Part shown: one piece after another, positions 1 to 56,404 of the stretch
How the letters are laid out: every line of letters begins with the position of its first letter
Numbering within the stretch: the first letter of the stretch is position 1
DNA from: Macrostomum lignano
Taxonomy: Eukaryota
Direction: 5' to 3'
NCBI GenBank assembly: GCA_002269645.1
Contig: NIVC01000035.1
Coordinates: forward strand, 248,001 to 312,000
DNA: 64,000 nt
The notes under the pieces: generated by a model
What the model saw: the letters and a program-made list of their open reading frames with translations, nothing else
Database searches by the model: none
Told to the model about the DNA's origin: nothing
Position numbers and translations under genes: made by a program

Positions 1-113
1 ACTACTATAAACCCTTATAGTTTTATATGCAAGTGAATTTAGACAATTGTTACTCGCATTTATGCATGTGCTGTTACATGTATGCAGAGTAAGCTAGGAG
101 AAGAATGGTTAAT

Positions 114-1560
114 GTCAAGTTCACCGTGAACTTCTCACTCTTGATCGCAGGCCTTATTTAATCCAGTCAGCATCGCGAGAAGCCGCAGGCCAGATGCACA
201 GAAAGAAAAGCGCATTGAACGCGCTGGCGCCCAAATAGCTAGCAAAGCAGATTTTGTCTTTGTGTCGCACTAAAAAGGATAGAAAAACGGCCAAGCGTCG
301 GGCAATTATCGACCGTCGTTTCTCAGCGGACTCGGACTGCGTGCGATGAGCTGCCACTTGAGGAAAACGGAAAACTGCAACAAAGGTGAAGAAGATCAGT
401 ATAAGCATCTGGGTGATTAGGAATGTTCCAACCAGAGGAATGATGTTCATCGACTTGGGCGCGGATTGGGAAGCGATGAGGACGTACAGCGTCATAGACA
501 TGATGATGGCGATTGACACGTTAGCTCGGTCGCCTTGCTGCTCAGCGAAGAACATGATACTAGCCAGTAGCGACAACAGTTCGTACGGCACAATCATCAG
601 GATTGCGTAATACGTCACGCGACGTTGCAGAAAGAATCGCAAATTGACAAACTGGAACGTGGAGCTGTTATCTACAACCATGTACTTGACGCTGTGGGTG
701 AGTCCGGCCAAGTCCCACTCGCCTACACTAAAAAAAGCGCTGCTATCAGACGTACTGGCACTCATTCTGCTGGTCAGAGTAAAGCTAAAAACGCTGGATG
801 GCGAGTTGATAGCTCCGATTTCCAGTGTGCACACCTGTCGATCAAATGGAAATAAACGCATATCCAGAGAGCAAGGAAATTGGATCACTGTGTAAATGTA
901 GGTAAATACGGAACCATCCGGAGACGCGATTGTTTCGAGGAATTTCGAGTTGCGCAAATCGAACAACTCGACCGATTTAGCGTTCCAATAGCCGATGTCG
1001 GGTATTCACAGGCTGTTCCTGTCAAGTCGTATCTGATTCACGCCAGTCTCAGTAGCGTTCCAGGCTAGTCTTGGATCGCGCCACGACATCAGTACCCAGC
1101 CGGACCATTCTAGCAGTTCTTCATCACCTAGTCCGTAGACTGTCTTCACATCAATGTTCACATGTACGGTGGTGTTGTAACCACTGAGACTGGGTGGCTG
1201 CATAGACCGGCACTGGGACAGATACTGCGGGCCGACGCTCTGAGTCAGGGCTCTGCAGACGGGTCCGTCAGTGTTGGTTGACGGATCCAGGCAGTCTGAA
1301 GGCTGCAGCGTTAGAGCCAAGGCTAGAAACAGTAATTGCATGTGTTCTTGCATAACTATATATTACTCTAGACTTATTGCTTAATGATGGACAGTTGGAA
1401 TTTGTGAGCACTTGTCTGAGACAAGCTTTCTGCCTCACTAATTATAATACCAAGGGATATGGAGCAGTGGAGACAAGTTGCAAGCTTTTGATTGGCTAGC
1501 GGAGCTGCGTACGATAGAAGTCAATTATTAAGGGAATGCGAAATCCATGGCAGTTCGGCA
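114..1560. repeat. Tandem duplicated segment, copy 1 (partner about 4850-6290)
   Basis: Direct alignment at offset about 4736 from tcaagttcaccgtg through catggcagttcggcag. Weaker homology continues (about 1700-1990 vs about 7440-7790). Confidence 0.92.
154..1353 (-). pseudogene. Intronless atypical nAChR-like Cys-loop ion channel subunit, copy 1, with one in-frame premature stop (TGA at 1008-1006; TGG/Trp in copy 2)
   Basis: ORFs 1006..1353 and 154..966 lie in one frame spanning 1200 nt and are colinear with intact copy 2. Signal peptide, Cys-loop CSLDMRLFPFDRQVC and four TM segments are present. The only disruption is AGC CTG TGA ATA versus AGC CTG TGG ATA. Confidence 0.88.
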
Positions 1561-2409
1561 GACATAAGCTGAACATTTTAGAGGCAATCAGACACAGGCT
1601 TCTTGATATTACGAACTGATGCGATAAGTTACAATGCCCAAGTTTTATTAAAGCAGTGGAAACTGCACTGGTATCGAAGCTATGCTCAGTGAATTCAGCC
1701 AGATACTTTACCCAGTAAATATTTCAAGCAGGTTGAACAAACTCCGTCGAAGCAAGAGTACCAGCTTGAACCAGCTAAACAAACTACTTGAGAACCTCTT
1801 GTTTCATCTGTAGAAAAGCAAAAGCAATTTTTTTTGATTCGAGAAAACTTTCAGTCAGCAGCAGCGGTGACTTAGCTGTCGGTTTGGTAAGCAAAGGAGA
1901 TTAATAATTTACCGATATGGGACTGCAGAAAAGGAATAGGACTAGACAGCAACTGTTTACCTGCTAAAACACTTCACAGTGATGAAATGTTTGAAAAGTG
2001 GAATTGAACAAGTTTTGGACGCTTGCTAAAAGCTTTAACTTTGCCTTATTAAGGAACCCTTTATGATCAGGCATCGGACTTTGTTTCGGTATGACTTGGC
2101 ATTATAATGTACCTTTTGCAATTGAATTCGTCCAAACTGCAACACCTTTCGTACACTAATTGCTTTCTTAACGGGAGTTAAATTTAGATCAGGCCATAGA
2201 CAGCTGCACAAAACGTTTCATCCAGTTTACAAAACATTTCTTGCCAATCCCAGCGGAATTGATTCAAGAATGGAGACACTTTACCGGTATTTGATAGAAA
2301 GCAGCACAAAATAAACAGTGTCAATGTGAGAAAGTTAAAGCAAAATTTCACTATTTGATTTTTCCATTGATGGCACTTCTCTAGTGCAATCATGTGCTGT
2401 GCAGCTTCT

Positions 2410-2860
2410 TCAAGCTCACTCTTCAATATCTGCATTCGCCAGGTATGCAAAGTCAGGTTCGCGACAGCGGCGGCTTGCCGTATAGAGTTCCTGTTGAACT
2501 GCTGGAACTGATAGGGCCCTCTTCACTGCTGCCTTCAGAGAAGAAACTGCTCGATCACCCGGTTTGGTTGAGTCACGGAGAGTACGGTAGCAGTTGAAAG
2601 GTGCTGTGCTCCAGTGATTCAAGTCCCCTCATAAAATATAACCACCTACTCAGCCTAGCAGAACGTCTAGCTACGCCAAGCAGAGTCAAGTTTTTTCCGC
2701 ACTGGCCGCATACTCGCACTGTTCTCATAGTTCGATTTGCACATCCTTGAGTTCTCGTCCTCCAAACTCTCGGCCCAAATTCATCTAGAAAGATCAGGTT
2801 TCCACCGTGTCCTTCGTTAATCATACTCTGTGTAAACTCATATCTCGCCGCCTTCACAAC
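2410..2860 (-). mobile_element. Decayed Tc1/mariner-IS630-type DDE transposase fragment
   Basis: Minus-strand translation gives LIFLDEFG..WRTRTQG..GQCGKNLTLL, then LPYSP*LN..IE..SSLKAAVKR across frameshifts and stops, matching the D(E)xG and YSPxLNPIE motifs of this superfamily. Confidence 0.75.
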
Positions 2861-4849
2861 CTGGGTAGCTCCGTATGTATAAACTTTTTAGTCCGCATTG
2901 AACAGGTGACAAACCAAATAAAAGAGCCATGCATTAATTGACTTGCTCTTAACTCATTTTATTTAATGAAATCTTTGAAGACTGCCACTGGTATTAAAAT
3001 ATTGGTTTCAAATGTGGCCTTGGTGCCGGAAAGAGTATTTGTAAGAGAGCAGTCCATCAGAGACGCGCTCCGTAACCTTCTCGAAACAAATTATACTAAT
3101 GCCCCAGTAGCATGCTGTACGTCTGTTCTTTTACCCCAAGTAGGATCCCAGAAAGGATTCGCCACCCTACTCAAGAGTCTCCTGCTAAAGCTGCTGCCCG
3201 TCCCGTCCAATCAGCATCGGGTGATCGCAGTTTCCTCAAACGTGAGACTTGTAGACAGCCACCGAATGAGTGTTGCGTCACCCAAAACCAACTTAATTTA
3301 TACATGCCCTCAAAAGTATTCTTATGCAGCCACCGAGAAGGTTTAATCAAATGTGGAGTCGGTGCAATTAGAGGCCAGAGGTGAAATCGCCTGCAAGCTC
3401 TGTGTGCTGCTACGATCAGAGGGGGATGTACAACATCCTGATTGGGTCCATAGGCCCCAACGTCTACGGGCACGGGAGCCCATACCCCTTTGAACAGCCA
3501 AAAATCATGTTGTCACACCAAATGCTGACTACTCTTAGGCTAGTAGGCTGAACTCCGCAGCCAATTAGATTCTCGCATTATTGCAGCCCTAGCAGAGAAT
3601 TCAGTGCTTCTGTGAGACCTGCAGGAAGCCTTGAGAAATCTACATAAAAATTGGCGCCTTGCTGGGCAAAAAATGAGCAGAGTCAAAAAGTAGAGCTGCA
3701 AAACTGTCTGCTAGCCTCAGGTCTCAGAGCTTTATTGGAGTATGGGAGAATGAAAATGGCAGAAAAAAAAGTAAAAGCACGAGTAGAGTCAATCAAAATG
3801 CTCGGCGGTCAAATAGTGGCAGTCAATTTGGGGTACTCAATCAATGTCGTGCTTTGCATGCACACACACACACACATACACGCACACACAGGCAGGTCCT
3901 TCAAGCTACGGTGCGACTCAAGCTAAAAGCTACGGTGCGACAGTACGGAGAGGCCGAACTCTAAAGGGGAAAGGCCAGAGATATGGGAGAAAAATCAGTA
4001 GAAAATAGATATAAAGTAATAAATCTTGACTTTGTAATACAAAAAATCAATTGCACAAACAGATGGTCCAAAAACTGGTCAAGCCAAAATATTCGGCACC
4101 ACAAGTGTGAAAATTTGATCGAAAAAAAGCTAAACCTAAAATTAAAGAAATGGAGAAGGGATGACGAAAGCCTGGGGAAGATGGGACAAGAGGGGAGAAA
4201 TAGATAAATTGTCAAAATCCTGGCGGCCACCAGAATGTCATCCTGTGCCATCCACATGTGCATATCCGCAGTGCAGATAAGTGGTACAGAATGGTGCAAA
4301 TATTAATTGTCCAAACATTGGAAAGCAAACCAATTAAATTAAACTCGGACAACATATACTCGCGTTAAGGAAAAAATTTGAATGAATATACAATCGATGC
4401 GACGAGGAACAAATACGCTTTTCTGAATGTTGACACTTCAAATTCGTATTTGCAGAGTGCTTTAGGTACATAGGAGGTACTTTATGCCAGTGCAAATATC
4501 AGATAGCTATTCCGTTGACTTCTTGTTAGCATGAAACAACTGAGACACCTCTACATGTAGAGAGTTTTTTGAAAATTAATTGCATTCCAAAGTCGAATCC
4601 ATCGAATGAATTCTGAGAAACGTAAGAGGGTTTTGCCACGGTACCGTAATATTTAGTTTTTAAAAATTACCATATTGTAACATCACTGGTTAATAGATCA
4701 GTTTTGACAATTTTATGGGTGGAGACACGTTACAAGGTAGAAGGGTGTTTAAAAAGGGCAATAAGAGACTCACTGAAGGGGTACAGAATAACAGGGTGCA
4801 GGGAGTCACTCACTGCAAAGGTAAACGATATAGTAGCTAAATTTTTAGT

Positions 4850-6290
4850 GTCAAGTTCACCGTGTACTTCTCACTCTTGATCGCGAGCCTTATTTAATCC
4901 AGTCAGCATCGCGAGAAGCCGCTGGCCAGATGCACAGAAAGAAAAGCGCATTGAACGCGCTGGCGCCCAAATAGCTAGCAAAGCAGATTTTGTCTTTGTG
5001 TCGCACTAAAAAGGACAGAAAAACGGCCAAGCGTCGGGCAATTATCGACCGTCGTTTCTCAGCGGACTCGGACTGCGTGCGATGAGCTGCCACATGAGGA
5101 AAACGGAAAACTGCAACAAAGGTGAAGAAGATCAGTATAAGCATCTGGGTGATTAGGAATGTTCCAACCAGAGGAATGATGTTCATCGACTTGGGCGCGG
5201 ATTGGGAAGCGATGAGGACGTACAGCGTCATAGACATGATGATGGCGATTGACACGTTAGCTCGGTCGCCCTGCTGCTCAGCGAAGAACATGATACTAGC
5301 CAGTAGCGACAACAGTTCGTACGGCACAATCATCAGGATTGCGTAATACGTCACGCGACGTTGTAGAAAGAATCGTAGATTGTAGAACTGAAACTCGGAG
5401 TTGGCAGCCCCAGCCATGTACTTGACGCTGTGGGTGAGTCCGGCCAAGTCCCACTCGCCTACACTAAAAAAAGCGCTGCTATCAGACGTACTGGCACTCA
5501 TTCTGCTGGTCAGAGTAAAGCTGAAAACGCTGGATGGCGAGTTAATAGATCCGATTTGTAGTGTGCACACCTGTCGATCAAATGGAAATAGACGCATATC
5601 CAGAGAGCAAGGAAACTGGGTCACTGTGTAAATGTAAGTAAATACGGAACCATCCGGAGACGCGATTGTTTCGAGGAATTTCGAGTTGCGCAAATCGAAA
5701 AACTCGACCGATTTAGCGTTCCAATAGCCGATGTCGGGTATCCACAGGCTGTTCCTGTCAAGTCGCATCTGATTCACGCCAGTCTCAGTAGCGTTCCAGG
5801 CTAGTCTTGGATCGCGCCACGACATCAGTACCCAGCCGGACCATTCTAGCAGTTCTTCATCGCCTAGTCCGTAGACTGTCTTCACATCGATGTTCACGTG
5901 TACGGTTGTGTTGTAACCACTGAGACTGGGTGGCTGCATAGACCGGCACTGGGACAGATACTGCGGGCCGACGCTCTGAGTCAGGGCTCTGCAGACGGGT
6001 CCGTCAGTGTTGGTTGACGGATCCAGGCAGTCTGAAGGCTGCAGCGTTAGAGCCAAGGCTAGAAACAGTAATTGCATGTGTTCTTGCATAACTATTACTC
6101 TGGACTTATTTCTTAATGATGGACAGTTGGAATTTGTGAGCACTTGTCTGAGTCAATCTTTCGGCCTCACTAAATACCAAGGGATATGGAGCAGTGGAGC
6201 CTAGTTGCACGCTTTTGATTGGCTAGCAGAACTGCATATGATAGAATTCGGTTATTAAGGGAAAGCGAAATACATGGCAGTTCGGCAGTT
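4850..6290. repeat. Tandem duplicated segment, copy 2 (partner 114-1560)
   Basis: Direct alignment with copy 1. Confidence 0.92.
4890..6089 (-). CDS. Intronless atypical nAChR-like Cys-loop ligand-gated ion channel subunit, copy 2 (399 aa from ATG 6089)
   Basis: Signal peptide MQEHMQLLFLALALTLQPSDC; SWRDPRLAW and WIPDIGYWN motifs; C-x13-C Cys loop with FPFD; GEW; M1-M4 with GDR before M2 and a short M3-M4 loop. No vicinal Cys in loop C and no loop-B Trp (GSINS). The ORF track start at 6143 is a GTG, so the first ATG is used. Confidence 0.93.
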   Translation of the reverse strand: MQEHMQLLFLALALTLQPSDCLDPSTNTDGPVCRALTQSVGPQYLSQCRSMQPPSLSGYNTTVHVNIDVKTVYGLGDEELLEWSGWVLMSWRDPRLAWNATETGVNQMRLDRNSLWIPDIGYWNAKSVEFFDLRNSKFLETIASPDGSVFTYIYTVTQFPCSLDMRLFPFDRQVCTLQIGSINSPSSVFSFTLTSRMSASTSDSSAFFSVGEWDLAGLTHSVKYMAGAANSEFQFYNLRFFLQRRVTYYAILMIVPYELLSLLASIMFFAEQQGDRANVSIAIIMSMTLYVLIASQSAPKSMNIIPLVGTFLITQMLILIFFTFVAVFRFPHVAAHRTQSESAEKRRSIIARRLAVFLSFLVRHKDKICFASYLGASAFNALFFLCIWPAASRDADWIK

Positions 6291-6429
6291 CGACAAAACT
6301 TGAGGTCTTTCGCCTCGGAAAAGCACAACAAAGCGCTGGTTTCGATGTAATACACACTGATGCAAAAACGTACAAAGCCCAACAACAGAAGAAAATTTCC
6401 TGATAGGTCTTAAAACAATATCAGCGTCA

Positions 6430-6950
6430 TAGGGCACTTTTTCGAGCTAGGGCGCAAACATAGGCCGCACTGCCGACAGAATCATGCATGTCCCAGCGGT
6501 AGGCAGCTGCAGGACTTCCTGCACTGGCTGTAGGCAGAACGACTCGGTGCGGCCTGTCAGCTGTAGACGCACCAGGCTCGCGCGACGATACAGTACCACG
6601 TAGGCAACTTCCTCATCGCCAATCTTGAAGACTGCGCATTGCAGGCCAGCGTGCGCGGCGTTAACTTGATGCTGGAACGATTCTCAACGCTGTAAAGCAG
6701 CACTACCTGGAACAACGCCGCCCTCTGACGCCATATAACGTAAGCCTCGTGGCTATCCCGCGGTGATGCCGCAGATCCTCGCGAACCAGACTGCCGAGAT
6801 AGACGAATTGCTGACGATCGAAGTCCTGTTGCCTATCCATCATCGCCTCCGCACAAAAATCGCAGCCTGCATGGAAGTCGTCCAGCACCCAGGGCACGGC
6901 GGTTTTCTGCGTGTCTTCACCAGGCCAGCACTCGTCGCAGCAGCAACCAA
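6430..6950 (-). mobile_element. Decayed non-LTR retrotransposon (RTE-like LINE) RT C-terminal fragment
   Basis: Across frameshifts: AGL..QKT, FVYLGSLV, VLLYSVE, AAHAGL..AVFKIG..LYRRA..RLQL..ESFCLQPVQEVL, which is the typical order of RT C-terminal motifs in RTE/L2-like LINEs. Confidence 0.72.
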
Positions 6951-7999
6951 ATTTTCAGTTTTTGCTGGTCTCTCTCGACGGTTGAGAAAAGTGTTGAAGT
7001 TTTTTAATATACGAGTATGAAAATTATAATCAGGATATACATGTACTGGGATATTGGTGCCTCCTGGATGACCTCAGCGAAGAGCCAAGACCTGCACCAT
7101 TGTGTTGCTTTGGGAGCAAAGCAACCCATTGCTTTGACAAGATCCGACAAAAACCCATTTGTCGGATCTAAATGCATTATGTCCTTTTGCAGCTAACTGA
7201 CTTTTTCTATGACCATATTCCCTCCAGTACTTTCATTCTCCTATCTATTCAATCCATGGCTAAACCTACCGCATTCCCCACTCAGACTATATAAGTCTTA
7301 AGCAGGCCCGCCCAAAAAAAATCAGTACCCGTATGTTTTCTTTCCAACATCAAATATACGACCTTGTAATCGGCTAGTTCATTTTCAAACAACACCGTTT
7401 TTTAATCTTAAATTACTATATTGCAATACGCGAAACTCGTGCTTACACAATGGACTAATAGTACCTAAACTTTACCCCGTGAATATTTCAAGAATTCTAA
7501 ACAGTCTGTCAATAATTAAAGGGAATCAGTGTGTACACGGGCACACGGGCACATAAGGAACAAGGTTAGCACGAGAGCCTTCTTCTGCCTTACCTATAGA
7601 AAAGCAAATGCAACTTTCAGATTCGAGAAAAACTTTCTGTCTGTCCACAGCAGCACTTTCTTTACCTATCGGCTTGGTAAGCTGAAGTCTAAGAGATGAA
7701 TAATTTACCGATATGTGACTTGCAGAAACAGAAATGGCCTTCCTCAAACCCACTCCACCAATGACGAAATGATGGAAATATGGTAGGAAACAAGTTTTTC
7801 TTTTTAGCTTTGGGGCAAAAAAGTGTCTTTGCCTTATTATAGGCACCTATGGTTTAGCAGACGACTCTATGAAGCTGTGACTTAGCATTAATTAGTACAT
7901 GTTTTTCGTCAGTACTCCAGACATTTGACATTTTGCAGTGGAGAGTAAGCTCAGGAAGAGTTTTGGGGCAGGTCAACATACGTGTATGAGTTTGATTGC

Positions 8000-8150
8000 C
8001 AGCCATTTGACCGCCGAAAGCTTGACTACTATCCATTTAACTTGGTTATGACTTGGTTAAGGTTCAGGATATGGTTTTAGGTTAGGGTTAGATTTAGGAT
8101 CAACAGTCAATTCGCGGCAGTCAAATTGGGGCAGCGAAATGTCGTGAACC
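8000..8150. mobile_element. Degenerate short inverted-repeat element with an internal ggttagggttag motif
   Basis: ccatttgaccgccgaaagcttgact (about 8003-8027) is an imperfect inverse of agtcaattcgcggcagtcaaattgg (about 8105-8129). Confidence 0.4.
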
Positions 8151-8967
8151 CGAGCAGTGTGTTGCTAATGTGCATGCTCAATATGAGCATCTATCAGATA
8201 TATGAGTGTGTATAGGAGTGCTAGCTCACTAGCTGAGAGCACCTCTCCTCTCCTTCTCTGTCAGCTGAATCGATTTCATTAATTTGGTTAGCAGCTACAA
8301 CACAGTGCTGAGCAAGAGAGTGAGTTTGCTGTATCCTTTGTTCGATCCCGTAAAACTAGTTTTACTAATTGGCATCAAGGTGAATAAGTCTGGCTACTGG
8401 TAAGTGCGAATGAAACACAATGCCAGAGACAACTCCTGTTTTGATCGATGCATGTACTGACGAAAAACTAAGTGTTGAACCTAATTAGAGGCAAATGTTA
8501 CACGTGTTGAAGGGCATTTTCCATGGGGGGTAAAGAAAAATGACACCCATTATATCATAAAAAGTGTCATAGTGCCCCATTTCCTAAGTACACGTTTAAC
8601 TTACTTTAGCCTGTAAAAATAAAAAAAATCATAAAAAAATATAACATTGTTTTGATTTTTTCCTATCCAAATATAAAAACAGAACAGTTTAATCATCAAA
8701 ACATCAAAAAACTGACAAAAAGATACATGCAAACCAAATATTTTAACAAAATATTTACCATGCTGTTTAAACTTATTAACTCTCGCACCTAATGCTACTT
8801 GCAGTAATAACAACAGTTTTAGGGAAGAAAAACATAGAGTAATTATTTTTTCAAAATACGCATTTTTTCTTATCATACAAAGTCCTAAAACTTTTAAATA
8901 AACAATAGATGGGAAAACTGTTTAATTAAAAACAATGTTGATGCCTAATTATTTAGAAGCCAAAAAC

Positions 8968-9330
8968 TCACTCCTCCCTCTTGCGAGCTGGTCCATACAC
9001 GGTTAGATAGTCATTGACTGAGCTGATGGTCTGCTGCAGGATGGCAGACACTGTGTCGGCGGTTTCTGGCGGCAGAGTGGGTCCCGACAGTATGCTGGCA
9101 GCGAACAGGTCCAGCGTAGACTCCAGCATGATTAGTTCGGAGCTGATCTCGTCTAGCATTGATCGGTACATGCTGAGTTTCAGAGCCGCATTCCTAGACT
9201 GACGAAGGCCAGATTCATCAGATTGCGGCGAAGCGACAACATCGAGTTTGGCCCGCTTGTTTGGTGCTGCCTTGTCTGCATCAGCATCCACATTGTCGTT
9301 TTCATTTGTTGAGGCACCTTGTCGTTTCAT
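8968..9330 (-). CDS. Orphan single-exon 120-aa protein with basic NLS-like motifs and a helical C-terminal half
   Basis: GC-richer open frame inside very AT-rich flanks; ATG in good context (atcacaATG); TATAAAA about 45 nt upstream; MKRQ..PNKRAK and terminal RKR. No recognisable family. Confidence 0.55.
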   Translation of the reverse strand: MKRQGASTNENDNVDADADKAAPNKRAKLDVVASPQSDESGLRQSRNAALKLSMYRSMLDEISSELIMLESTLDLFAASILSGPTLPPETADTVSAILQQTISSVNDYLTVYGPARKREE

Positions 9331-11488
9331 TGTGATTCTTGCTAGACTTTTAATGTAGAATTATTTTTATTTTTATAAAGCAGCTAGATGGGCTGAATTT
9401 CAAGTATCTGAAAAATAATTTACATGTGTGATGATTCTTTAACTAAAAGAGTTGATTTAAAAGACTCAATCTATTTTGTTCTATTTAAAAGAAATTCTGA
9501 TTTGCAAAAAAGTGCTATTATATAGTTTTTAATGTATATCCATTTAATGACTTAACAAAGCCATAAAGTCAGATAGCAAAATTAATAAAACTTTCCCATG
9601 TAAAAATGAGACTCTAATAATTAAAGTCAACCAAAATGTCTCAAAGAGCTTTTAATAGCTTTTAGCATTGATAGAATTTAAAAATTGTTTGAGTCAATAT
9701 TAAAACATTTATTGCAATATTTATACAGTTCAATTAAGTTTCATTACTTAATATTATTATATATTATTATTATATTATTATATAATTTTTTGAAATTTAT
9801 AGTACTAAGAAAATAATAAAAACTTAAATGTTGTGTTAATTTTCTTGCTTTAAATCAATGGAATTTATGTTAGATGAAGATGAATATTAAAACTAAGCAA
9901 AGCAAATACAGGGATTTAGCTATACCTGTAGTAGTGCTACAATTGTATTTTGATTATGTATGTCCAACATTATATATTATTCTTATTACATTTGGATATT
10001 ATCCCATATAAATTAGAAAATAAACAATGAAAAGATTTTGATAAAACTTTATTTTATGAACTGAGTCCTACAAGAGTTGATAGATCCAACCAAGAGATGA
10101 AATTGATCTTGTTAGACACAAATACACAACACAATATTAAATACACAAAGATATAATATAAGGCAAGCTACCAACAATTTTTTTTAATTCACAAATTCTA
10201 TTGTTTGTCTTAGTTTGTCTTAGTAATAAAGAACTAATCGGTTTGTCAAAATATTTCGCAAATTGCAACTCAGCTACACATAACGTGCCATCTGAGAGAC
10301 TGCTGTTTTGAAATCTGACTTGCTCAAAGTTTTTTTAACAGATTATGGTAGAAACCTTGTACATCATGTCATGCTTTTTGAATCTACGTATGTACTATAA
10401 AAATTTTAATAATCAAAGACGGAGAATGAAATTGCAATAGTTCTGTAATAGCCCTGTAATATAGTTTCAAAGTTTTGAAAGAGGAATACACGAAGGAGAG
10501 AAACGTAGGCTCCAACTCTGTCTATTGAAATTATCACTACGCAAGTTTTTGTCAAGCAGCGAAATTTTTGAAAAGCGATAATTTTATGAACCAATACTCG
10601 GTATAACAAATTCAAACTTTTTAATATTGCAAATTAGCACATGCCTATGTGTAATAAAATTCTATACATTTTTTATTTTTACAGAAACACTTTCACTGCT
10701 TTTAAACACAATATAAAACCAAATAAATGAGGCAATTTTTTATTTTGACTTGAAACTTCCTATATCCGATTTTTAATATCACGGTCTTGTGTGACACTAA
10801 GTTATTTATTTTGAAGAGTTAGCCAGAATATTCAAAACAATATTATGAAGTAAGCAAGGAAGTTATTAAATTCTTCTAACTTTTTTCATTATTGAGATTT
10901 CATCATTATTGAGACTATGTTGCTAGTGACTTTGTTACATTATATAGCGGTAGGCCAGTTTTTTTCTTTTTTGTAGCACTGCAAAATTTTTTAGATCTCT
11001 TTTCTTCTAAATAGTTCTATTTTAGTGAGAACTTTTATGTTAGAATAATTGATTGCTATTTAAGTGTAGTAGTTGAATACGAAGAATCTTGTGTAGTAGA
11101 ACTCATTATATGCTAGTCTAATAAATTGACTTAAAAAAGTATTTAACTTGATTTATGCCTATTTTTGTTTTAGCATATAGACGCTAGATTAGCTCTGACT
11201 TTACTACAAGTTAGCATAATATTGTTGCAAAGAACATATTGAACCTTTGTTCTGCAGAAAATACCACCAATAGTATGTTCCTATATTAAATCAGATTATT
11301 AACTTGCATATGTTGAACACATTCTATAACTTCTGATATTTAATTAAACATTTAGTTATGAACCTTTTATCATTAAATTTGTATCAGCCACCATTATAAC
11401 TTCTCGATTTTAATCAATTGTTCTCTTTCTCTACCACTAAGCTCATTGTTACATAACCTTATTTATGCTATAACCAGCAGTAAGAAAC

Positions 11489-30319
<18,831 letters not shown>

Positions 30320-33142: not shown

Positions 33143-34962
33143 GAGTGACAGGGAGAATAACAGGCAGTGTGACAGACTGAGTGACAGGGAGAATAACAGA
33201 CAGTGTGACAGACTGAGTGACAGGGAGAATAACAGAAAGTGTGACAGACGGAGTGACAGGGAGAATAACAGAAAGTGTGACAGACGGAGTGACAGGGAGA
33301 ATAACAGACAGTGTGACGAGCTGAGTGACAGGGAGAATAACAGAAAGTGTGACAGACGGAGTGACAGGGAGAATAACAGAAAGTGTGACAGACGGAGTGA
33401 CAGGGAGAATAACAGAAAGTGTGACAGACGGAGTGACAGGGAGAATAACAGAAAGTGTGACAGACGGAGTGACAGGGAGAATAACAGAAAGTGTGACAGA
33501 CGGAGTGACAGGGAGAATAACAGACAGTGTGACGAGCTGAGTGACAGGGAGAATAACAGAAAGTGTGACAGACGGAGTGACAGGGAGAATAACAGAAAGT
33601 GTGACAGACGGAGTGACAGGGAGAATAACAGAAAGTGTGACAGACGGAGTGACAGGGAGAATAACAGACAGTGTGACGAGCTGAGTGACAGGGAGAATAA
33701 CAGACAGTGTGACGAGCTGAGTGACAGGGAGAATAACAGAAAGTGTGACAGACTGAGTGACAGGGAGAATAACAGGCAGTGTGACAGACTGAGTGACAGG
33801 GAGAATAACAGAAAGTGTGACAGACTGAGTGACAGGGAGAATAACAGACAGTGTGACAGACTGAGTGACAGGGAGAATAACAGAAAGTGTGACAGACGGA
33901 GTGACAGGGAGAATAACAGAAAGTGTGACAGACGGAGTGACAGGGAGAATAACAGACAGTGTGACGAGCTGAGTGACAGGGAGAATAACAGACAGTGTGA
34001 CGAGCTGAGTGACAGGGAGAATAACAGAAAGTGTGACAGACTGAGTGACAGGGAGAATAACAGGCAGTGTGACAGACTGAGTGACAGGGAGAATAACAGA
34101 AAGTGTGACAGACTGGGTGACAGGAGGAATAACAGACAGTTTGACAAGCTGAGTGACAGGGAGAATAACAGACAGTGTGACAGACGGAGTGGCAGGGAGA
34201 ATAACAGACAGTGTGACAGACTGAGTGGCAGGGAGAATAACAGACAGTTTGACAGACTGAGTGACAGGGAGAATAACAGAGAGTGTGACAGACTGAGTGA
34301 CAGGGAGAATAACAGAAAGTGTGACAGACTGGGTGACAGGAGGAATAACAGACAGTTTGACAAGCTGAGTGACAGGGAGAATAACAGACAGTGTGACAGA
34401 CGGAGTGGCAGGGAGAATAACAGACAGTGTGACAGACTGAGTGGCAGGGAGAATAACAGACAGTGTGACAGACTGAGTGGCAGGGAGAATAACAGACAGT
34501 GTGACAGACTGAGTGACAGGGAGAATAACAGAGAGTGTGACAGACTGAGTGACAGGGAGAATAACAGAGAGTGTGACGAGCTGAGTGACAGGGAGAATAA
34601 CAAACAGTGTGACAGACGGAGTGGCAGGGAGAATAACAGGCAGTGTGACAGACTGAGTGACAGGGAGAATAACAGACAGTGTGACAAGCTGAGTGACAGG
34701 GAGAATAACAGACAGTGTGACAGACGGAGTGACAGGGAGAATAACAAACAGTGTGACAGACTGAGTGACAGGGAGAATAACAGAGAGTGTGACAGACTGA
34801 GTGACAGGGAGAATAACAGTGTGACAGACTGAGTGACAGGGAGAATAACAGAAAGTGTGACAGACTGAGTGACAGGGAGAATAACAGACAGTGTGACAGA
34901 CGGAGTGACAGGGAGAAAAACAGACAGTGTGACAAGCTGAGTGACAGGGAGAATAACAGAAA
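33143..34962 (+). repeat. 36-bp minisatellite, about 50 copies
   Basis: Unit gacagactgagtgacagggagaataacagacagtgt. Confidence 0.97.
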
Positions 34963-35456
34963 TTTGACAGGGACAGGGACCCATCTTAGCTCCCTTCCCC
35001 AACACCTGCCTTCCCCGTCCCCCCTCTCCTTCCACTCCATCAAGTCGGGTGACGCAATGGAGGCACGCAAACTGCAGGTTAGCAATCCCTGTCTGTATAT
35101 TCGGTCTGTACATACTAAAATAGTTTCTACCGGAGTCGAACTGCAGTAACGTCTCGTTCGCTATCTCACTCTTGGATTTTAGATGCGTGACGATGTAATG
35201 ACAAAAGACCTCCCGCTGTGACCAATGCTCCACCATCACGCTCTGATAAATGGCAGTGCCCCACCTCCACTAAAGCTGCTAAATGACTAGGCTTAGCGAC
35301 TCAACCTCCAGTTCGTGACTGACAAGGCGAAGTTCCTGGCTGACTTCCAAGAGTTGCCAGTTCTCCGGGTCTTTGTTCTACTGCTGGCGATTAGTAGGTC
35401 CGCTTTGATCTGGATTGGGGCTTGCAGCTTGGCAGCTACTGACACCCGACTGCCAA

Positions 35457-37612
35457 ATGAAGGGAGAGGATGAAGGGAGAGGATGAAGGGGAGAGGTTAT
35501 GAAGGGAGAGAATAAAGGGAGAGAATGAAGAGAGAGAATAAAGGGAGAGAATGAATGGAGAGAATGAAGGGAGAGAATGAAGGGAGAGAATGAAGGGAGA
35601 TAGTGAAGGATGAGAATGAAGGGAGATAGTGAAGGGAGAGAATGAAGGGAGAGAATGAAAGGAGAGAATGAAGGGAGAGAAATAAGGTAGAGATGAAGGG
35701 AGAGAATGAAGGGAGAGAATGAAGAGGGAGAATGAAGAGGGAGAATGAAGGGAGAGAATGAAGAGGGAGAATGAAGAGGGAGAATGAAGGGAGAAAATGA
35801 AGAGGGAGAATGAAGAGGGAGAATGAAGGGAGAAAATGAAGAGGGAGAATGAAGGGAGAGAATGAAGAGGGAGAATGAAGAGGGAGAATGAAGGTAGAGA
35901 ATGAAGGGAGAGAATGAAGAGGGAGAATGAAGAGGGAGAATAAAGGGAGAGAACGAAGGGAGAGAACGAAGGGAGAGAATGAAGAGAGAGAATGAAGAGG
36001 GAGAATGAAGAGGGAGAATGAAGGGAGAGAATGAAGGGAGAGAATGAAGAGGGAGAATGAAGAGGGAGAATGAAGGGAGAGAATTAAGGGAGAGAATGAA
36101 GGGGGAAAATGAAGGGGGAGAATGAAGAGGGAGAATGAAGAGGGAGAATGAAGAGGGAGAATGAAGGGAGAGAATGAAGAGGGAGAATGAAGAGGGAGAA
36201 TAAAGGGAGAGAACGAAGGGAGAGAACGAAGGGAGAGAATGAAGAGAGAGAATGAAGAGGGAGAATGAAGAGGGAGAATGAAGAGGGAGAATGAAGGGAG
36301 AGAATGAAGAGGGAGAATGAAGGGAGAGAATGAAGAGGGAGAATGAAGAAGGAGAATGAAGAGGGAGAATGAAGAGGGAGAATGAAGGGAGAGAATGAAG
36401 GGAGAGAATGAAGGGAGAGAATGAAGAGAGAGAATGAAGGGAGAGAATGAAGAGGGAGAATGAAGAAGGAGAATGAAGAAGGAGAATGAAGAGGGAGAAT
36501 GAAGAGGGAGAATGAAGGGAGAGAATGAAGGGAGAGAATGAAGAGGGAGAATGAAGAGGGAGAATGAAGGGAGAGAATGAAGGGAGAGAATGAAGGGGGA
36601 AAATGAAGGGGGAGAATGAAGGGGGAAAATGAAGGGGGAGAATGAAGAGGGAGAATGAAGAGGGAGAATAAAGGGAGAGAATGAAGAGGGAGAATGAAGG
36701 GAGAGAATGAAGGGGGAAAATGAAGGGGGAGAATGAAGAGGGAGAATGAAGAGGGAGAATGAAGAGGGAGAATGAAGAGGGAGAATGAAGGGAGAGAATG
36801 AAGAGGGAGAATGAAGGGAGAGAATGAAGGGGGAAAATGAAGAAGGAGAATGAAGAAGGGGAATGAAGAGGGAGAATGAAGAGGAAGAATGAAGGGAGAG
36901 AATGAAGGGAGAGAATGAAGGGAGAGAATGAAGAGAGAGAATGAAGAGGGAGAATGAAGAGGGAGAATGAAGAGGGAGAATGAAGAGGGAGAATGAAGGG
37001 AGAGAATGAAGAGGGAGAATGAAGGGAGAGAATGAAGAGGGAGAATGAAGAAGGAGAATGAAGAGGGAGAATGAAGAGGGAGAATGAAGGGAGAGAATGA
37101 AGGGAGAGAATGAAGGGAGAGAATGAAGAGAGAGAATGAAGGGAGAGAATGAAGAGGGAGAATGAAGAAGGAGAATGAAGAAGGAGAATGAAGAAGGAGA
37201 ATGAAGAGGGAGAATGAAGAGGGAGAATGAAGGGAGAGAATGAAGGGAGAGAATGAAGGAGAGAATGAAGGGAGAGAATGAAGGGGGAAAATGAAGGGGG
37301 AGAAGGAAGAAGGAGAATGAAGAGGGAGAATGAAGGGAGAGAATGAAGAGGGAGAATGAATGGAGAGAATGAAGGGAGAGAATGAAGGGAGAGAATGAAG
37401 GGAGAGAATGAAGAAGGAGAATGAAGAGGGAGAATGAAGGGAGAGAATGAAGGGAGAGAATGAAGGGAGAGAATGAAGAAGGAGAATGAAGAGGGAGAAT
37501 GAAGGGAGAGAATGAAGAGGGAGAATGAAGGGAGAGAATGAAGGGAGAGAATGAAGGGAGAGAATGAAGGGAGAGAATGAAGAAGGAGAATGAAGAGGGA
37601 GAATGAAGGGAG
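35457..37612 (+). repeat. 13-bp polypurine minisatellite (gaatgaagggaga / gaatgaagaggga)
   Basis: Direct inspection; the same family occurs at 39420-40100. Confidence 0.96.
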
Positions 37613-38299
37613 ACAGTAAGATCAGTGAAAGCAGCGCTGGATTGCTGAGCACACCGACCCTGACTCTGCAATGGTCAATACCCGAATTTTTTAAATCAAT
37701 CGCTTGTAAAACTTCACAAAGAAGCCATTGCGATACAAGAAAGCTCGAACGGAGGCTGACCCAGAAGCCTCTCCCAGATGAGAGCGATACCAGCAGACAG
37801 TTGGGAAAATTGCTTGGACAAGTTCTCATATCAATAAGCTTCATCAGTCCAGATCCCCTTTTGAGTGGTTCCGCGCGGCGAGGTCAGGCCGACTGTGTAG
37901 CTGACGGTTGTGCGATCGGACACTCAAGATAAATCTGACAGCGTAAAGACTAAAAAACAACTGCGCTAGGAATATGGATTGGGGTCAGGCCATGGACCGC
38001 TAGAGTTAGAGATCCGGATTTAGACAGCACTACAAAAAATTCATCAAATTCCTTTGTTCGTCCATTCCGCTGACTCCTGAGTACAACACAAGTGCGCCAA
38101 CACTGTACGCATACACGATCACACACGATCAATGGCAAGCAATGTAGACTCTCTGTACTTTGATTTGGTTCCGGTTCATTTGGGGCTTATATGCGCGAAA
38201 ATTAACCAGGGGGTTGTCAGTCAATTAATTCACAGCCATTTGAGCCAACTCCCAAGGCACAGACAATGTACATGCCTGACGATTAGAAAGTCAGGGCCA

Positions 38300-43267: not shown

Positions 43268-43884
43268 GCCAATTATCACACAGTGAAGCAGGTGATCAGA
43301 AGCGTGATATTTTGTTGGTTTCCCAGCCACCTTGCCAGCTATGCTCAGTCACCTTAACAAGTTATTGAACATGCAAACAGATTCTCTTCTACTCATTTTT
43401 CCAGTTCTGAAATTTCCTCAACTTTATGCCAGCAATAATATGCCCACAGGAGCAAACAATGACACACGCCTTGCGCAATATGAACCCATTGTATTCCTAA
43501 ATTGCGCGAATAACACCCTTGGACATGGAATCGGGTTAGAGGGGTCACAGAGGTCAAACTGAGATCCGTGTGCGATACAGGGCGATTCCCAGTTTGTTTT
43601 GGTTGAAAGCGAAAGCCGTGCAGAGACTGAGCTGTCGCCGTAACCTGCATGGTTATTAAAACAAATACGGGCAAAGTTCTAAACAGAAGCAGCGATAGGG
43701 GTCCCGCGACCCTGATTTCCAGGGAAGCTCTGTTTGTTCCCCGAAGCCCGTCTGATGACTGGGAGTTTGGAGCAACAGCCCGCGGCTCCAACAGTGTAGC
43801 GCGGTTTTGTGTATCCGACGGAGTCTGCTGGGCAGGTGGGCAGTGAGAGTAGAGTTGGAGACTGTAATTGAGGGTAAAAAAGAG

Positions 43885-45130
43885 GGTGAAATGTAGGGTA
43901 GAAGTGAGAATGAACTGGAGCATAGAAGAGAGGATGAACTGGAGGGTAGAAGAGAGGATGAACTGGAGGTTAGAAGAGAGGATGAACTGGAGGGTAGAAG
44001 AGAGGATGAACTGGAGGGTAGAAGAGAGGATGAACTGGAGGGTAGAAGAGAGGGTGAGCTGGTGGGTAGAAGAGAGGATGAGCTGGTGGGTAGAAGAGAG
44101 GATGAACTGGAGGGTAGAAGAGAGGATGAGCTGGTGGGTAGAAGAGAGGATGAACTGGAGGGTAGAAGAGAGGATGAACTGGAGGGTAGAGGAGAGGGTG
44201 AACTGGAGGGTAGAAGAGAGGATGAGCTGGTGGGTAGAAGAGAGGATGAACTGGAGGGTAGAAGAGAGGATAAACTGGAGGGCAGAAGACAGGGTGAACT
44301 GGAGGGTAGAAGAGAGGATGAACTGGAGGATAGAAGAGAGGGTGAACTGGAGGATAGAAGAGAGGGTGAACTGGAGGGTAGAGGAGAGGGTGAACTGGAG
44401 GGTAGAAGAGAGGGTGAACTGGAGGATAGAAGAGAGGGTGAACTGGAGGATAGAAGAGAGGGTGAACTGGAGGATAGAAGAGAGGGTGAACTGGAGGGTA
44501 GAAGAGAGGATGAACTGGAGGGTAGAAGAGAGGGTGAACTGGAGGATAGAAGAGAGGGTGAACTGGAGGATAGAAGACAGGGTGAACTGGAGGGTAGAAG
44601 AGAGGATGAACTGGAGGGTAGAAGAGAGGGTAAACTGGAGGGTAGAAGAGAGGATGAACTGGAGCATAGAAGAGAGGATGAACTGGAGGGTAGAAGAGAG
44701 GGTGAAATGCAGGGTAGAAGAGAGGGTGAAATGCAGGGTAGAAGAGAGGATGAACTGGAGGGTAGAAGAGAGGGTGAAATGCAGGGTAGAAGAGAGGGTG
44801 AAATGCAGGGTAGAAGAGAGGATGAACTGCAGGGTAGAAGAGAGGGTGAACTGGAGGGTAGAAGAGAGGATGAACTGCAGGGTAGAAGAGAGGATGAACT
44901 GCAGGGTAGAAGAGAGGGTGAACTGGAGGGGTAGAAGAGAGGGTGAACTGGAGGGGTAGAAGAGAGGATGAACTGGAGGGGTAGAAGAGAGGGTGAACTG
45001 GAGGGGTAGAAGAGAGGGTGAACTGGAGGGGTAGAAGAGAGGGTGAACTGGAGGGGTAGAAGAGAGGATGAACTGGAGGGGTAGAAGAGAGGGTGAACTG
45101 GAGGGGTAGAAGAGAGGATGAACTGGAGGG
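43885..45130 (+). repeat. 24-bp minisatellite (gaactggagggtagaagagaggat) with 25-bp variants at the 3' end
   Basis: Direct inspection. Confidence 0.96.
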
Positions 45131-45621
45131 TATGATAAGGCATTTAAGGCGATACCCAGGAGCAGACGAGTCTGCATACTTGAGCAATGCCTGTCGCTGT
45201 TTTTTCTTGTCTTGGACTCGTGACTCACACAGTCTTCACTCCCCATTCATATTTCAAGGTCCCGGCCTTCCCGCCAGGGGGCGGAGCCTCTATATGTAAG
45301 CAAACTTTGCTCAAGTCAACCAGAAAAAACCCATGGGCTCCGCTTCCCTTTCAATTGTCTCTGGTTTCTAAATTCTACGCTCTGAAATATGACCAAGTTA
45401 GCAAAACCAAACTCTGGCGTGATGCGGCAGTTTGTCAAGCAGATAAAAAGCAATCCTGGATAAAGTTTGGTGACCTTATTAACTTATCAGCGAGAATGTC
45501 GTTATTGTAAGACTATTTGCGGTCTGAATTGAATTTAATTCTTCAATTATTCAATGAAACTCAATCAAATAATTTTTGGTTTTTGTTTTTAATTTGTAAG
45601 GTATTTTGCTGCCTTAAACAG

Positions 45622-49300: not shown

Positions 49301-50440
49301 CATAATGTTGAAACGCATGCATCAAGCAGCAGGATGCCTGTGTTTTCTGAAGCCTTGAACTGCTCTCCGATGCTTCAGGAAGCCTAAACTTCAGTGTGTT
49401 GTAACCTACACTTCATGATACTGTAACCTACACTTCATGATACTGTAACCTACACTTCATGAAAATGTAACCTACACTTCATGAGACTGTAACCTACACT
49501 TCATGATACTGTAACCTACACTTCATGAGACTGTAACCTACACTTCATGATACTGTAACCTACACTTCATGATACTGTAACCTACACTTCATGATACTGT
49601 AACCTACACTTCATGAGACTGTAACCTACACTTCATGATACTGTAACCTACACTTCATGATACTGTAACCTACACTTCATGATACTGTAACCTACACTTC
49701 ATGAGACTGTAACCTACACTTCATGATACTGTAACCTACACTTCATGATACTGTAACCTACACTTCATGATACTGTAACCTACACTTCATGATACTGTAA
49801 CCTACACTTCATGATACTGTAACCTACACTTCATGATACTGTAACCTACACTTCATGATACTGTAACCTACACTTCATGATACTGTAACCTACACTTCAT
49901 GATACTGTAACCTACACTTCAGGATGTTGTAACCTACACTTCAGGATGCTGTAACCTATACTTCAGGATGTTGTAACCTACACTTCAGGACGTTGTAACT
50001 TACACTTCATAATACTGTAACCTACACTTCAGGATGTTGTAACCTACACTTCAGGATGCTGTAACCTATACTTCAGGATGTTGTAACCTACACTTCAGGA
50101 TGCTTTAACCTATACTTCATAATACTGTAGCTTACACTTCATAATACTGTAACCTACACTTCAGGATGCTGTAACCTACACTTCAGGGTGCTGTAACCTA
50201 CACTTCAGGGTGCTGTAACCTACACTTCAGGGTGCTGTAACCTACACTTCAGGATGCTGTAACCTACACTTCAGGGTGCTGTAACCTACACTTCAGGGTG
50301 CTGTAACCTACACTTCAGGGTGCTGTAACCTACACTTCAGGGTGCTGTAACCTACACTTCAGGATGCTGTAACCTACACTTCAGGGTGCTGTATTCTATA
50401 CTTCAGGGTGCTGTATTCTATACTTCAGGGTGCTGTAACA
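46331..50440 (+). repeat. Tandem duplication (period 2399 bp): about 660 bp unique sequence plus a 22-bp minisatellite (ctgtaacctacacttcatgata) in each unit
   Basis: agctgatgagaaatgatg begins at about 46332 and 48731; identical ORFs at 46594 and 48993; arrays at about 46995-48731 and about 49395-50437. Confidence 0.95.

Positions 50441-54348: not shown

Positions 54349-56404
<2,056 letters not shown>

What the first reader, a model, noticed from the sequence alone, without database searches (positions are those of the whole stretch)
154..6089. Tandem, intronless, non-cholinergic nAChR-like channels: candidate chemosensory family analogous to cephalopod chemotactile receptors
Seen: single-exon genes next to a 13-exon gene, arranged head-to-tail. 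The Cys loop and four TMs are intact, but there is no vicinal Cys-Cys, the loop-B Trp is replaced by Ile (GSINS), the loop-C aromatics are largely lost, there is an acidic residue before M2 (GDR, cation-type), and the M3-M4 loop is only about 37 aa. Known: cephalopod chemotactile receptors are tandemly expanded nAChR derivatives lacking the ACh site, and nematodes also use divergent Cys-loop channels for chemosensation. Inference: an independent lineage-specific sensory receptor expansion.
Basis: partly seen in the sequence, partly recalled or inferred. Interest (0 to 1): 0.75.

Follow-up and report, generated by a model that had tools for sequence, protein, structure and literature searches.

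The report
Duplicated divergent flatworm nicotinic-type channel gene
Two head-to-tail, intron-free copies of a divergent nicotinic-receptor-like ion-channel gene, probably from a Macrostomum-like flatworm, one intact and one with a premature stop; nothing here shows that they are taste or smell receptors.

Summary
The genes are real. Copy A (4890-6089, minus strand) is an intact 399-aa single-exon Cys-loop channel. It has a signal peptide, a 13-residue Cys-loop with FPFD, four TM helices, GDR before M2 and a ~37-aa M3-M4 loop. It has no vicinal Cys, and Ile replaces the loop-B Trp. "Loop-C aromatics largely lost" is overstated.

The nearest named relative is a Macrostomum lignano protein (51% identity). 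With trematode "nAChR subunits" and three unnamed sequences it forms a clade with 91/100 bootstrap support. The whole clade lacks the Cys-Cys pair, and the trematodes keep the loop-B Trp.

The pair looks like an old tandem duplication. A 1453-bp stretch (gene plus ~200 bp of promoter) was later homogenised to 95.5%. A 39-nt island at the loop-C tip escaped this and differs at 15 positions. Outside the island dN/dS is 0.13.

My reading is an orphan, non-alpha, probably cation-selective subunit plus a recently disabled paralogue. A sensory role and an "expansion" are untested: two copies are seen, one broken. Intronless tandem nAChR-like genes and Cys-Cys-less orphans are already known in lophotrochozoans. 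Interest is modest.

The parts
4890..6089 (-). Copy A: intact single-exon CDS of 399 aa plus stop. It encodes a nAChR-type pentameric ligand-gated channel subunit with a signal peptide, extracellular domain, M1-M4 and a short intracellular loop.
   Evidence: ORF and translation; Pfam LBD and TM domains; PDB matches to nAChR; hydrophobic segments and Cys positions; AlphaFold2 model, pLDDT 72, with nAChR structures as best Foldseek hits.
154..1353 (-). Copy B: a paralogue of the same length, 97% nt and 96.5% aa identical to copy A. An in-frame TGA at codon 116 makes it a probable young pseudogene or null allele.
   Evidence: Translation; tblastn; codon-by-codon comparison.
1006..1008 (-). Premature stop codon of copy B. 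TGA replaces TGG, the Trp of WIPD in loop A.
   Evidence: W116 is invariant in the alignment of relatives.
4845..6288 (-). Homogenised duplicated unit, copy A side: about 45 nt of 3' flank, the CDS and 199 nt of 5' flank.
   Evidence: blastn 95.5% over 1453 columns; alignments.
109..1561 (-). Homogenised duplicated unit, copy B side.
5376..5414 (-). Loop-C tip of copy A (codons 226-238, AGAANSEFQFYNL). This is a divergent island inside the homogenised unit.
   Evidence: 15 of the 36 CDS differences fall in these 39 nt; P about 1e-10 after correcting for window choice. The position was assigned as loop C by alignment to alpha7-like sequences.
640..678 (-). Loop-C tip of copy B (VVDNSSTFQFVNL).
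5565..5609 (-). Cys-loop of copy A (C161 to C175, CSLDMRLFPFDRQVC).
5196..5264 (-). M2 pore helix of copy A (residues 276-298). GDR lies just before it, giving Asp at -1'. Position 9' is Met and 20' is Gln. The M2-M3 motif SQSAPKSM follows and is typical of the clade.
   Evidence: Alignments to beta4 and beta2 and to relatives.
6090..6288 (-). Proximal 5' flank shared by both copies (its counterpart is 1354-1561). It contains a CCAAT motif at 6218-6222, about 130 nt before the ATG. I infer it is the promoter.
   Evidence: Sequence; alignment shows 17 mismatches plus 9 gap columns in 199 nt. Promoter function is inferred, not shown.
7573..7903 (-). Distal upstream segment of copy A. It is weakly similar to 1790-2117 upstream of copy B, in the same order and orientation. 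It looks like a remnant of an older and larger duplication unit.
   Evidence: blastn 76% over 144 nt, E 3e-11; 66% over 354 columns, plus three weaker collinear matches.

Best explanation
Copy A encodes a functional subunit of a pentameric, probably cation-selective, nAChR-related channel. It belongs to a clade whose named members are all flatworms (Macrostomum and trematodes). It is a non-alpha type subunit. Its own principal face lacks the Cys-Cys pair and the loop-B Trp, so it cannot supply a canonical acetylcholine site, and its agonist is unknown (an orphan).

The two copies come from an old tandem duplication. The coding region and proximal promoter were later homogenised by gene conversion. 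The loop-C tip stayed divergent.

Both copies evolved under purifying selection until copy B recently acquired a nonsense codon.

What is shown: the fold, domains, motifs, the duplication, the mosaic divergence, the nonsense codon and the clade membership. What is inferred: cation selectivity (from Asp at -1'), non-cholinergic gating, gene conversion and expression.
For: - Family and fold.
- Motifs.
- Clade: best hit is M. lignano A0A1I8I4U5 at 51% identity and 276 bits. Next come unnamed proteins of about 390 aa, then trematode and monogenean 'nAChR subunit' proteins.
- Bootstrapped NJ tree: copy A with M. lignano 95/100; the 8-member clade 91/100.
- Shared GDR and S-x-x-A-P-[KR]-S-M motifs.
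- Purifying selection: outside the loop-C island dN is 0.007 and dS 0.054, a ratio of 0.13. The non-coding flanks inside the unit differ by 8.5-9%.
- Old duplication with later conversion: homology at 95.5% stops abruptly about 200 nt before the ATG and about 45 nt after the stop. Beyond that only collinear similarity of 66-76% remains.
- The loop-C island is about 62% identical, similar to the distal flanks.
- Acidic -1' residues determine cation selectivity, and PAR-type motifs anion selectivity. This is established pLGIC knowledge.
Against: - There is no transcript, expression or functional evidence.
- Copy A could itself be silent.
- The source organism is not in the protein collections searched, so the genome-wide copy number is unknown.
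- The loop-C island could instead be a short conversion tract from an unseen third paralogue.
- The distal upstream similarity could be a dispersed repeat rather than a remnant of the duplication.
- The NJ tree is crude: representatives clustered at 50% identity, Kimura distances, 383 columns.
- Position 9' is Met rather than the usual Leu, and 20' is Gln, so pore properties may be unusual.
Confidence: 0.55

Rival explanations
1. One reading: the genes are members of a flatworm chemosensory receptor family. It would derive from nAChRs independently of the cephalopod chemotactile receptors, be gated by environmental (non-ACh) ligands and be expressed in peripheral sensory cells.
For: - The Cys-Cys pair and the loop-B Trp are lost.
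- The genes are intronless and tandem, as reported for chemotactile receptors (CRs) and many other chemoreceptor families (PMC11526382).
- 13 of the 14 amino-acid differences between the paralogues lie in the extracellular domain.
- A strongly divergent loop-C tip persists despite homogenisation elsewhere.
- The short intracellular loop lacks the long synaptic-type region.
Against: - Only two copies are seen and one is broken.
- The nearest M. lignano cluster has three near-identical members, so no expansion is visible.
- The Cys-Cys loss is shared by the whole clade, including parasites.
- Four of the five aromatic-box positions are still aromatic in copy A.
- The same gene features occur in hundreds of molluscan nAChR-like genes with developmental, immune or stress-related expression (PMC6896357).
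- The island could persist for a neutral reason, because high local divergence itself blocks conversion.
- There are no expression data.
Confidence: 0.12
2. It is a structural or complementary (beta-like) subunit of a heteromeric, ACh-gated flatworm nicotinic receptor. It would contribute its minus face to an alpha-type partner, and its own plus face would be irrelevant.
For: - The best sequence matches in PDB are the non-alpha subunits beta4 and beta2.
- The loop-D Trp (W86) and hydrophobic loop-E positions of the complementary face are retained.
- Every member of the clade, including the trematode proteins annotated as nAChR subunits, lacks the Cys-Cys pair.
- A plus face free of constraint would explain the variable loop C and the lost loop-B Trp.
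Against: - In the alignment, the alpha7-like and alpha10-like sequences and the beta subunits all keep the loop-B Trp, and so do the trematode clade members. Its loss in the free-living branch suggests a remodelled pocket.
- The 37-aa intracellular loop is far shorter than in known heteromeric nAChR subunits.
- No partner is known.
Confidence: 0.23
3. Both copies are dead retrocopies with no function.
For: The genes are intronless. Copy B has a nonsense codon. Neither protein is annotated in any collection searched.
Against: - dN/dS is 0.13 outside the loop-C island, and synonymous changes outnumber non-synonymous ones 14 to 7.
- Copy A's ORF, signal peptide and all motifs are intact.
- About 200 nt of upstream sequence, including a CCAAT box, was co-duplicated.
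- Full-length single-ORF relatives of about 390 aa exist in at least three other sequencing projects.
- No poly(A) tract follows the 3' end.
Confidence: 0.08

Closest known systems
Flatworm nAChR-like subunits: Macrostomum lignano A0A1I8I4U5 / A0A1I8HUS3 / A0A1I8HYE3; trematode 'nAChR subunit' proteins such as Fasciola hepatica THD26242.1 and Paragonimus westermani KAA3676803.1
   Same: - They share a clade (91/100 bootstrap).
- None has the loop-C Cys-Cys pair.
- They share GDR before M2, the S-x-x-AP[KR]SM M2-M3 motif and the WIPD and FPFD motifs.
- The M. lignano protein also has Ile at the loop-B Trp position and the N-terminal Cys pair.
   Different: - Identity is only 51% to M. lignano and about 30% to the trematodes.
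- The trematode members keep the loop-B Trp (PWQS). Some have very long intracellular loops (proteins up to 800-1100 aa), and the Fasciola gene has at least 3 exons across 13 kb.
- None of these proteins has a described function, as far as I could find.
Intronless, tandemly arrayed nAChR expansions of molluscs (Jiao et al. 2019, PMC6896357)
   Same: Both show the same genomic pattern of intron-free nAChR-type genes in head-to-tail arrays. [quoted passage not shown] Those genes also have divergent binding sites, and pseudogenes occur among them.
   Different: The phylum is different; that paper found intronless nAChRs only in molluscs among the species it examined. Molluscs have arrays of up to 12 genes and 99-217 genes per genome, whereas here only two copies are seen. 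No retroposition scars (poly(A), target-site duplications) are visible here.
Cephalopod chemotactile receptors (CRT1, CRB1)
   Same: Both are nAChR-derived cation-channel subunits that lack the ACh signature residues. Both are intronless, and both show diversification in the orthosteric pocket (PMC11526382; bioRxiv 10.1101/2025.03.03.641191).
   Different: - This gene is not a member of that cephalopod family; its nearest relatives are flatworm proteins.
- CRs did not appear among the top PDB matches by sequence or by fold.
- CRs number 6-26 per genome, with shown sucker expression and shown hydrophobic ligands. None of that is known here.
Alpo4 (Alvinella pompejana orphan Cys-loop receptor, PDB 8BX5; PMC10338036)
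   Same: It is a lophotrochozoan nAChR-like subunit without the vicinal Cys pair. It does not respond to ACh or serotonin and is still an orphan, so it is a precedent for 'nicotinic by sequence, not by ligand'.
   Different: Alpo4 retains the whole aromatic cage, including the loop-B Trp. The flatworm gene has lost that Trp and has a much shorter intracellular loop.

Membership tests
Cys-loop / pentameric ligand-gated ion channel superfamily | Extracellular ligand-binding domain plus four-helix transmembrane domain | tested here: met
   Pfam PF02931 1.4e-29 and PF02932 1.6e-8, both above the curated cut-offs. Four hydrophobic segments. Predicted fold matches nAChR structures at E about 5e-21 and TM about 0.6-0.67.
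Cys-loop / pentameric ligand-gated ion channel superfamily | Cys-loop: two Cys separated by 13 residues, with the [FY]P[FY]D motif | tested here: met
   C161-SLDMRLFPFDRQV-C175 in copy A, and the same in copy B.
Cationic nAChR / 5-HT3 branch | Best similarity to nAChR subunits, and an acidic -1' residue before M2 (G-E/D-K/R) rather than the P-A-R of anion channels | tested here: met
   The top 50 or so PDB sequence hits are all nAChR subunits, and 5-HT3A follows. GDR aligns with GEK. Ion selectivity itself was not measured.
Alpha-type (agonist-binding) nAChR subunit | Vicinal Cys-Cys at the tip of loop C | tested here: not met
   There are no adjacent cysteines. The loop-C tip reads AGAANSE in copy A and VVDNSST in copy B where alpha7-like sequences have YNCCPEP.
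Alpha-type (agonist-binding) nAChR subunit | Aromatic box: TyrA, TrpB, TyrC1 and TyrC2 on the principal face | tested here: not met
   TrpB is Ile182. TyrA is Trp123. TyrC2 is Phe233. TyrC1 is ambiguous (Tyr224 lies one or two positions away).
Cephalopod chemotactile receptors | Membership of the cephalopod CR clade within the molluscan nAChRs | tested here: not met
   The nearest relatives are flatworm proteins, in a clade with 91/100 support. CR structures were absent from the top sequence and fold matches in PDB. CR sequences themselves could not be placed in the tree.
Cephalopod chemotactile receptors | Intronless genes in an expanded, clustered family | tested here: inconclusive
   Intronless: yes. 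Clustered: two copies 4.7 kb apart, one with a stop codon. Genome-wide family size is unknown.
Cephalopod chemotactile receptors | Expression in peripheral sensory cells, and gating by poorly soluble non-ACh ligands | not testable with these tools
   No transcriptome or electrophysiology is available.
Retrogene followed by tandem duplication (the mollusc nAChR model) | Loss of the parental introns, with a poly(A) remnant or target-site duplications | tested here: inconclusive
   The CDS is uninterrupted, while a Fasciola clade member has at least 3 exons. No poly(A) tract or flanking direct repeats were seen. The shared 200-nt promoter shows that the last duplication or conversion was DNA-based.
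Pseudogene (copy B) | A disabling mutation in an otherwise alignable CDS | tested here: met
   TGG to TGA at codon 116. There are no frameshifts. Whether this is fixed, polymorphic or a sequencing error cannot be told from one sequence.

The most novel reading that the evidence does not exclude
Free-living flatworms may have independently turned a short-loop, Cys-Cys-less and TrpB-less branch of the nAChR family into environmental chemoreceptors. In that case paralogue-specific loop-C tips would be kept distinct by selection while gene conversion homogenises the rest of the gene. This would be a second, convergent origin of 'chemotactile-type' receptors outside the cephalopods.
Probability: 0.1. 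Interest if true: 0.7.

Novelty: new member of a known kind. Interest (0 to 1): 0.3.

Why it matters
If copy A is expressed, it adds a compact, divergent orphan to the flatworm Cys-loop repertoire. It is 399 aa with a 37-aa intracellular loop, which makes it convenient for heterologous expression or structural work.

The pair is also a tidy example of concerted evolution that spares a ligand-binding loop.

The finding bears on how often nicotinic-type receptors are recruited to non-cholinergic ligands. That matters for sensory biology, and also because flatworm nAChR-like channels are candidate anthelmintic targets.

As it stands this is an ordinary lineage-specific paralogue pair. The chemosensory idea is a hypothesis, not a finding.

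Tried and rejected
- **Word-indexed homologue search.** It was run with copy A and with a family alignment. It returned only generic nAChRs at about 28% identity and missed the M. lignano relative. The exhaustive HMMER search was needed to find it.
- **Source organism.** Exact look-ups of copy A failed, and a CD109-like exon found nothing. The organism is inferred only from the nearest relative.
- **Chemotactile receptor (CR) sequences.** I tried to reach them through PDB with copy A and with a molluscan nAChR as queries. No CR appeared among the 60 rows shown, so no direct CR comparison or tree was made.
- **Foldseek against PDB.** It confirms the fold but cannot separate the subfamilies.
- **A transposon between the copies.** The ORF at 2573-2857 looked transposase-like by eye, but it and the other intergenic ORFs gave no Pfam hit at E up to 1. 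No inverted repeats were found in 1-12000. I dropped the idea.
- **First bootstrap run.** It was invalid because the distance formula produced NaN values. It was repeated with a cap.
- **Haplotype-collapse artefact.** I rejected this because the flanks outside the 1453-bp unit are not alignable at high identity.
- **Origin of the unnamed relatives.** One (P0012) comes from a Tara Pacific coral long-read metagenome. I therefore do not call the clade strictly flatworm-only.
- **RNA genes.** tRNA and Rfam scans of the window found nothing.
Full report
**What is there**

The first 6.3 kb of the window holds two copies of one gene on the minus strand. Copy A is at 4890-6089 and copy B at 154-1353. 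Each is exactly 1200 nt. A tblastn of copy A against the whole window finds only these two.

Copy A is an uninterrupted ORF of 399 codons. Pfam places it in the neurotransmitter-gated ion-channel family, with the ligand-binding domain at 1.4e-29 and the membrane domain at 1.6e-8. The best matches among solved structures, by sequence, are nAChR beta4, beta2 and alpha7 at about 1e-29, and 5-HT3A follows. An AlphaFold2 model has a mean pLDDT of 72. It shows the expected beta-sandwich and four helices, and its best structural matches are nAChR structures.

| Feature | Finding |
|---|---|
| Signal peptide | MQEHMQLLFLALALTLQPSDC, hydrophobic |
| Cys-loop | C161-SLDMRLFPFDRQV-C175 |
| Other cysteines | C21, C33, C48, C369, C386; no vicinal pair |
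| Loop-B Trp | aligns with Ile182 (GSINS) |
| Pre-M2 motif | GDR aligns with the GEK of cationic nAChRs, so Asp is at -1' |
| Pore | 9' is Met (Leu in relatives); 20' is Gln |
| TM segments | 248-270, 276-298, 306-329, 367-389 |
| M3-M4 loop | about 37 residues |

Two points do not.

- Copy B is not intact. Codon 116 is TGA (window 1006-1008) where copy A has TGG. It replaces the Trp of WIPD, which is invariant in the alignment of relatives.
- "Loop-C aromatics largely lost" is too strong. F233 aligns with the second loop-C Tyr, and Y224 and Y236 flank the tip. The loop-A Tyr position holds Trp123, and the complementary-face loop-D Trp (W86) is kept. What is truly missing from the principal face is the Cys-Cys pair and the loop-B Trp.

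**How the two copies relate**

High identity (95.5% over 1453 aligned columns) covers 109-1561 and 4845-6288. That is the CDS, 199 nt upstream with a CCAAT motif, and about 45 nt downstream. Similarity drops abruptly outside this unit.

Further upstream only weak, collinear, same-orientation matches remain. These include 1808-1937 with 7594-7735 at 76% (E 3e-11), and 1790-2117 with 7573-7903 at 66% over 354 columns, plus three shorter matches in the same order.

Divergence inside the unit is mosaic:

- No differences in codons 1-60.
- 8.5-9% in the non-coding flanks.
- 21 differences in the other 1161 coding nt.
- 15 differences in the 39 nt of codons 226-238, the tip of loop C.

The chance of such a cluster, corrected for the choice of window, is about 1e-10. 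In this island both synonymous and non-synonymous divergence are high (NG86 dS 0.78, dN 0.30). Outside it dS is 0.054 and dN 0.007, a ratio of 0.13.

My reading is an old tandem duplication whose gene and proximal promoter were later homogenised by gene conversion. The loop-C tip kept the old divergence. This is inference, and three alternatives remain:

- A micro-conversion from an unseen third paralogue produced the island.
- The island persisted for a neutral reason, because high local mismatch blocks conversion.
- The distal similarity is a dispersed repeat.

A haplotype-duplication artefact is unlikely, because the flanks do not align at high identity.

The low dN/dS shows that both lineages were constrained after the last homogenisation. 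The nonsense codon in copy B is therefore recent, polymorphic or an error. Thirteen of the 14 amino-acid differences lie in the extracellular domain (residues 108-236). They include two next to the loop-B position (Q178E, S181A). None lies in the membrane helices.

**Relatives**

The word-indexed protein search found only generic nAChRs at about 28% identity. The exhaustive HMMER search found closer relatives:

- The best hit is a partial Macrostomum lignano protein, A0A1I8I4U5 (51% identity, 276 bits). It comes from a cluster of three near-identical entries.
- Next come three unnamed full-length proteins of 386-398 aa from raw-read assemblies.
- Then come trematode and monogenean proteins annotated as nAChR subunits, from Fasciola, Paragonimus, Dicrocoelium, Clonorchis, Opisthorchis, Schistosoma, Heterobilharzia and Cichlidogyrus.

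In a bootstrapped NJ tree of 115 representatives, copy A joins M. lignano in 95/100 replicates. The 8-member clade of copy A, M. lignano, three unnamed sequences and three trematodes is found in 91/100. Its internal order is unresolved.

The whole clade lacks Cys-Cys and shares GDR and the S-x-x-A-P-[KR]-S-M motif after M2. The trematodes keep the loop-B Trp (PWQS). Copy A, M. lignano and the three unnamed short proteins have Ile, Phe or Leu there.

The unnamed relatives sit as single ORFs on short contigs without poly(A) tails. One of them comes from a Tara Pacific coral long-read metagenome, so its organism is unknown and I do not claim the clade is strictly flatworm-only.

A Fasciola member spans 13 kb with at least three exons, so the intron-free state here is probably derived.

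Copy A and a neighbouring CD109-like exon have no match in the collections. The source species is therefore not represented, and a Macrostomum-like flatworm is the best guess.

**Mechanism**

Shown: a complete pLGIC subunit gene with the motifs of a cationic nAChR-type pore and a non-canonical principal binding face.

Inferred: copy A assembles into pentamers that conduct cations, on the established role of the acidic -1' ring. It also cannot provide a canonical ACh site from its own principal face.

Two modes remain open. It could be an orphan receptor gated by something other than ACh, alone or with paralogues. Or it could be a beta-like partner that lends its minus face, where the loop-D Trp is retained, to an alpha-type subunit. 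I lean towards the orphan reading for three reasons:

- The loop-B Trp is kept by the beta subunits and by the trematode clade members but is lost here.
- The intracellular loop is very short.
- The paralogues differ mainly in loops B and C.

The margin is small.

**The chemosensory proposal**

The analogy with cephalopod chemotactile receptors rests on features that are real but not specific. Intronless, tandemly arrayed, divergent nAChR genes number in the hundreds in bivalves. They are linked there to development, immunity and stress (PMC6896357). Cys-Cys-less orphans such as Alpo4 are known in annelids (PMC10338036).

CRs are defined by their cephalopod clade, sucker expression and hydrophobic ligands (PMC11526382). 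None of these could be tested here, and clade membership is not met. The "expansion" consists of two copies, one of them disabled. I put the chemosensory reading at about 0.1.

**Verdict**

This is a real and correctly located gene pair. It is a new, divergent member of a known kind. It has a neat signature of concerted evolution and an overlooked nonsense codon. The sensory interpretation is unsupported but not excluded. Interest 0.3.

Noticed in passing
window 12248-30319 (+): A multi-exon gene of the alpha-2-macroglobulin family, with CD109 as its best PDB match. Its exons carry the MG2, bait-region, A2M, TED and receptor-binding domains. At the thioester site PYGCGEQ is replaced by PAGAAEN (Cys to Ala, Gln to Asn), so the protein probably cannot form a thioester. 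The last exon ends in a hydrophobic tail (NPILLLLVALTTVAMLVG) that looks like a GPI-anchor or TM signal.
   Followed up: partly
window 13596-56404: The window is unusually rich in long minisatellite and microsatellite arrays. Examples are 23200-25906 (23-nt unit, 118 copies), 33143-34960 (36 nt), 35456-37613 (13 nt, 166 copies), 43870-45132, 47000-50439 (22 nt, 156 copies), 52116-53600 ((TCTCC)n) and 54349-56404 ((TAGA)n, 514 copies). Several lie in introns of the CD109-like gene. They produce long spurious ORFs and extreme GC and AT skews.
   Followed up: partly
window 20228-20623: A (GTCT)n array of about 100 copies sits inside the long ORF 19751-20974, which also carries the two halves of the TED domain. 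It is probably an intron. Read naively, it translates as a CLSV repeat joining the two halves in frame.
   Followed up: no
window 46594-46824 and 48993-49223 (+): Two identical 76-aa ORFs lie 2.4 kb apart, at the edge of and inside the 22-nt minisatellite region (47000-50439). This points to a larger duplicated block around that array.
   Followed up: no
copy A residues 21-48 (window about 5946-6029, -): The N-terminal extension before the first beta-strand carries three cysteines (C21, C33, C48). C33 and C48 are conserved in the M. lignano relative (PACRAL ... PSCHV), which suggests an extra disulfide not typical of nAChR subunits. The model has low confidence in this region (pLDDT below 50).
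   Followed up: no
search results, (P0013-P0017, P0021-P0032 and others): Many high-scoring database 'proteins' of 800-1800 aa, from nematodes, an annelid, a hemichordate and a fish, contain two to nine pLGIC-domain matches. They are most likely neighbouring tandem genes fused by gene prediction. That would mean tandem arrays of nAChR-like genes are common in many phyla.
   Followed up: no
window 8968-9330 (-): A 120-aa ATG-initiated ORF (MKRQGASTNENDNVDADADK...) lies in an AT-rich stretch between the channel genes and the CD109-like gene. It has no Pfam match, and it is unclear whether it is a gene.
   Followed up: partly
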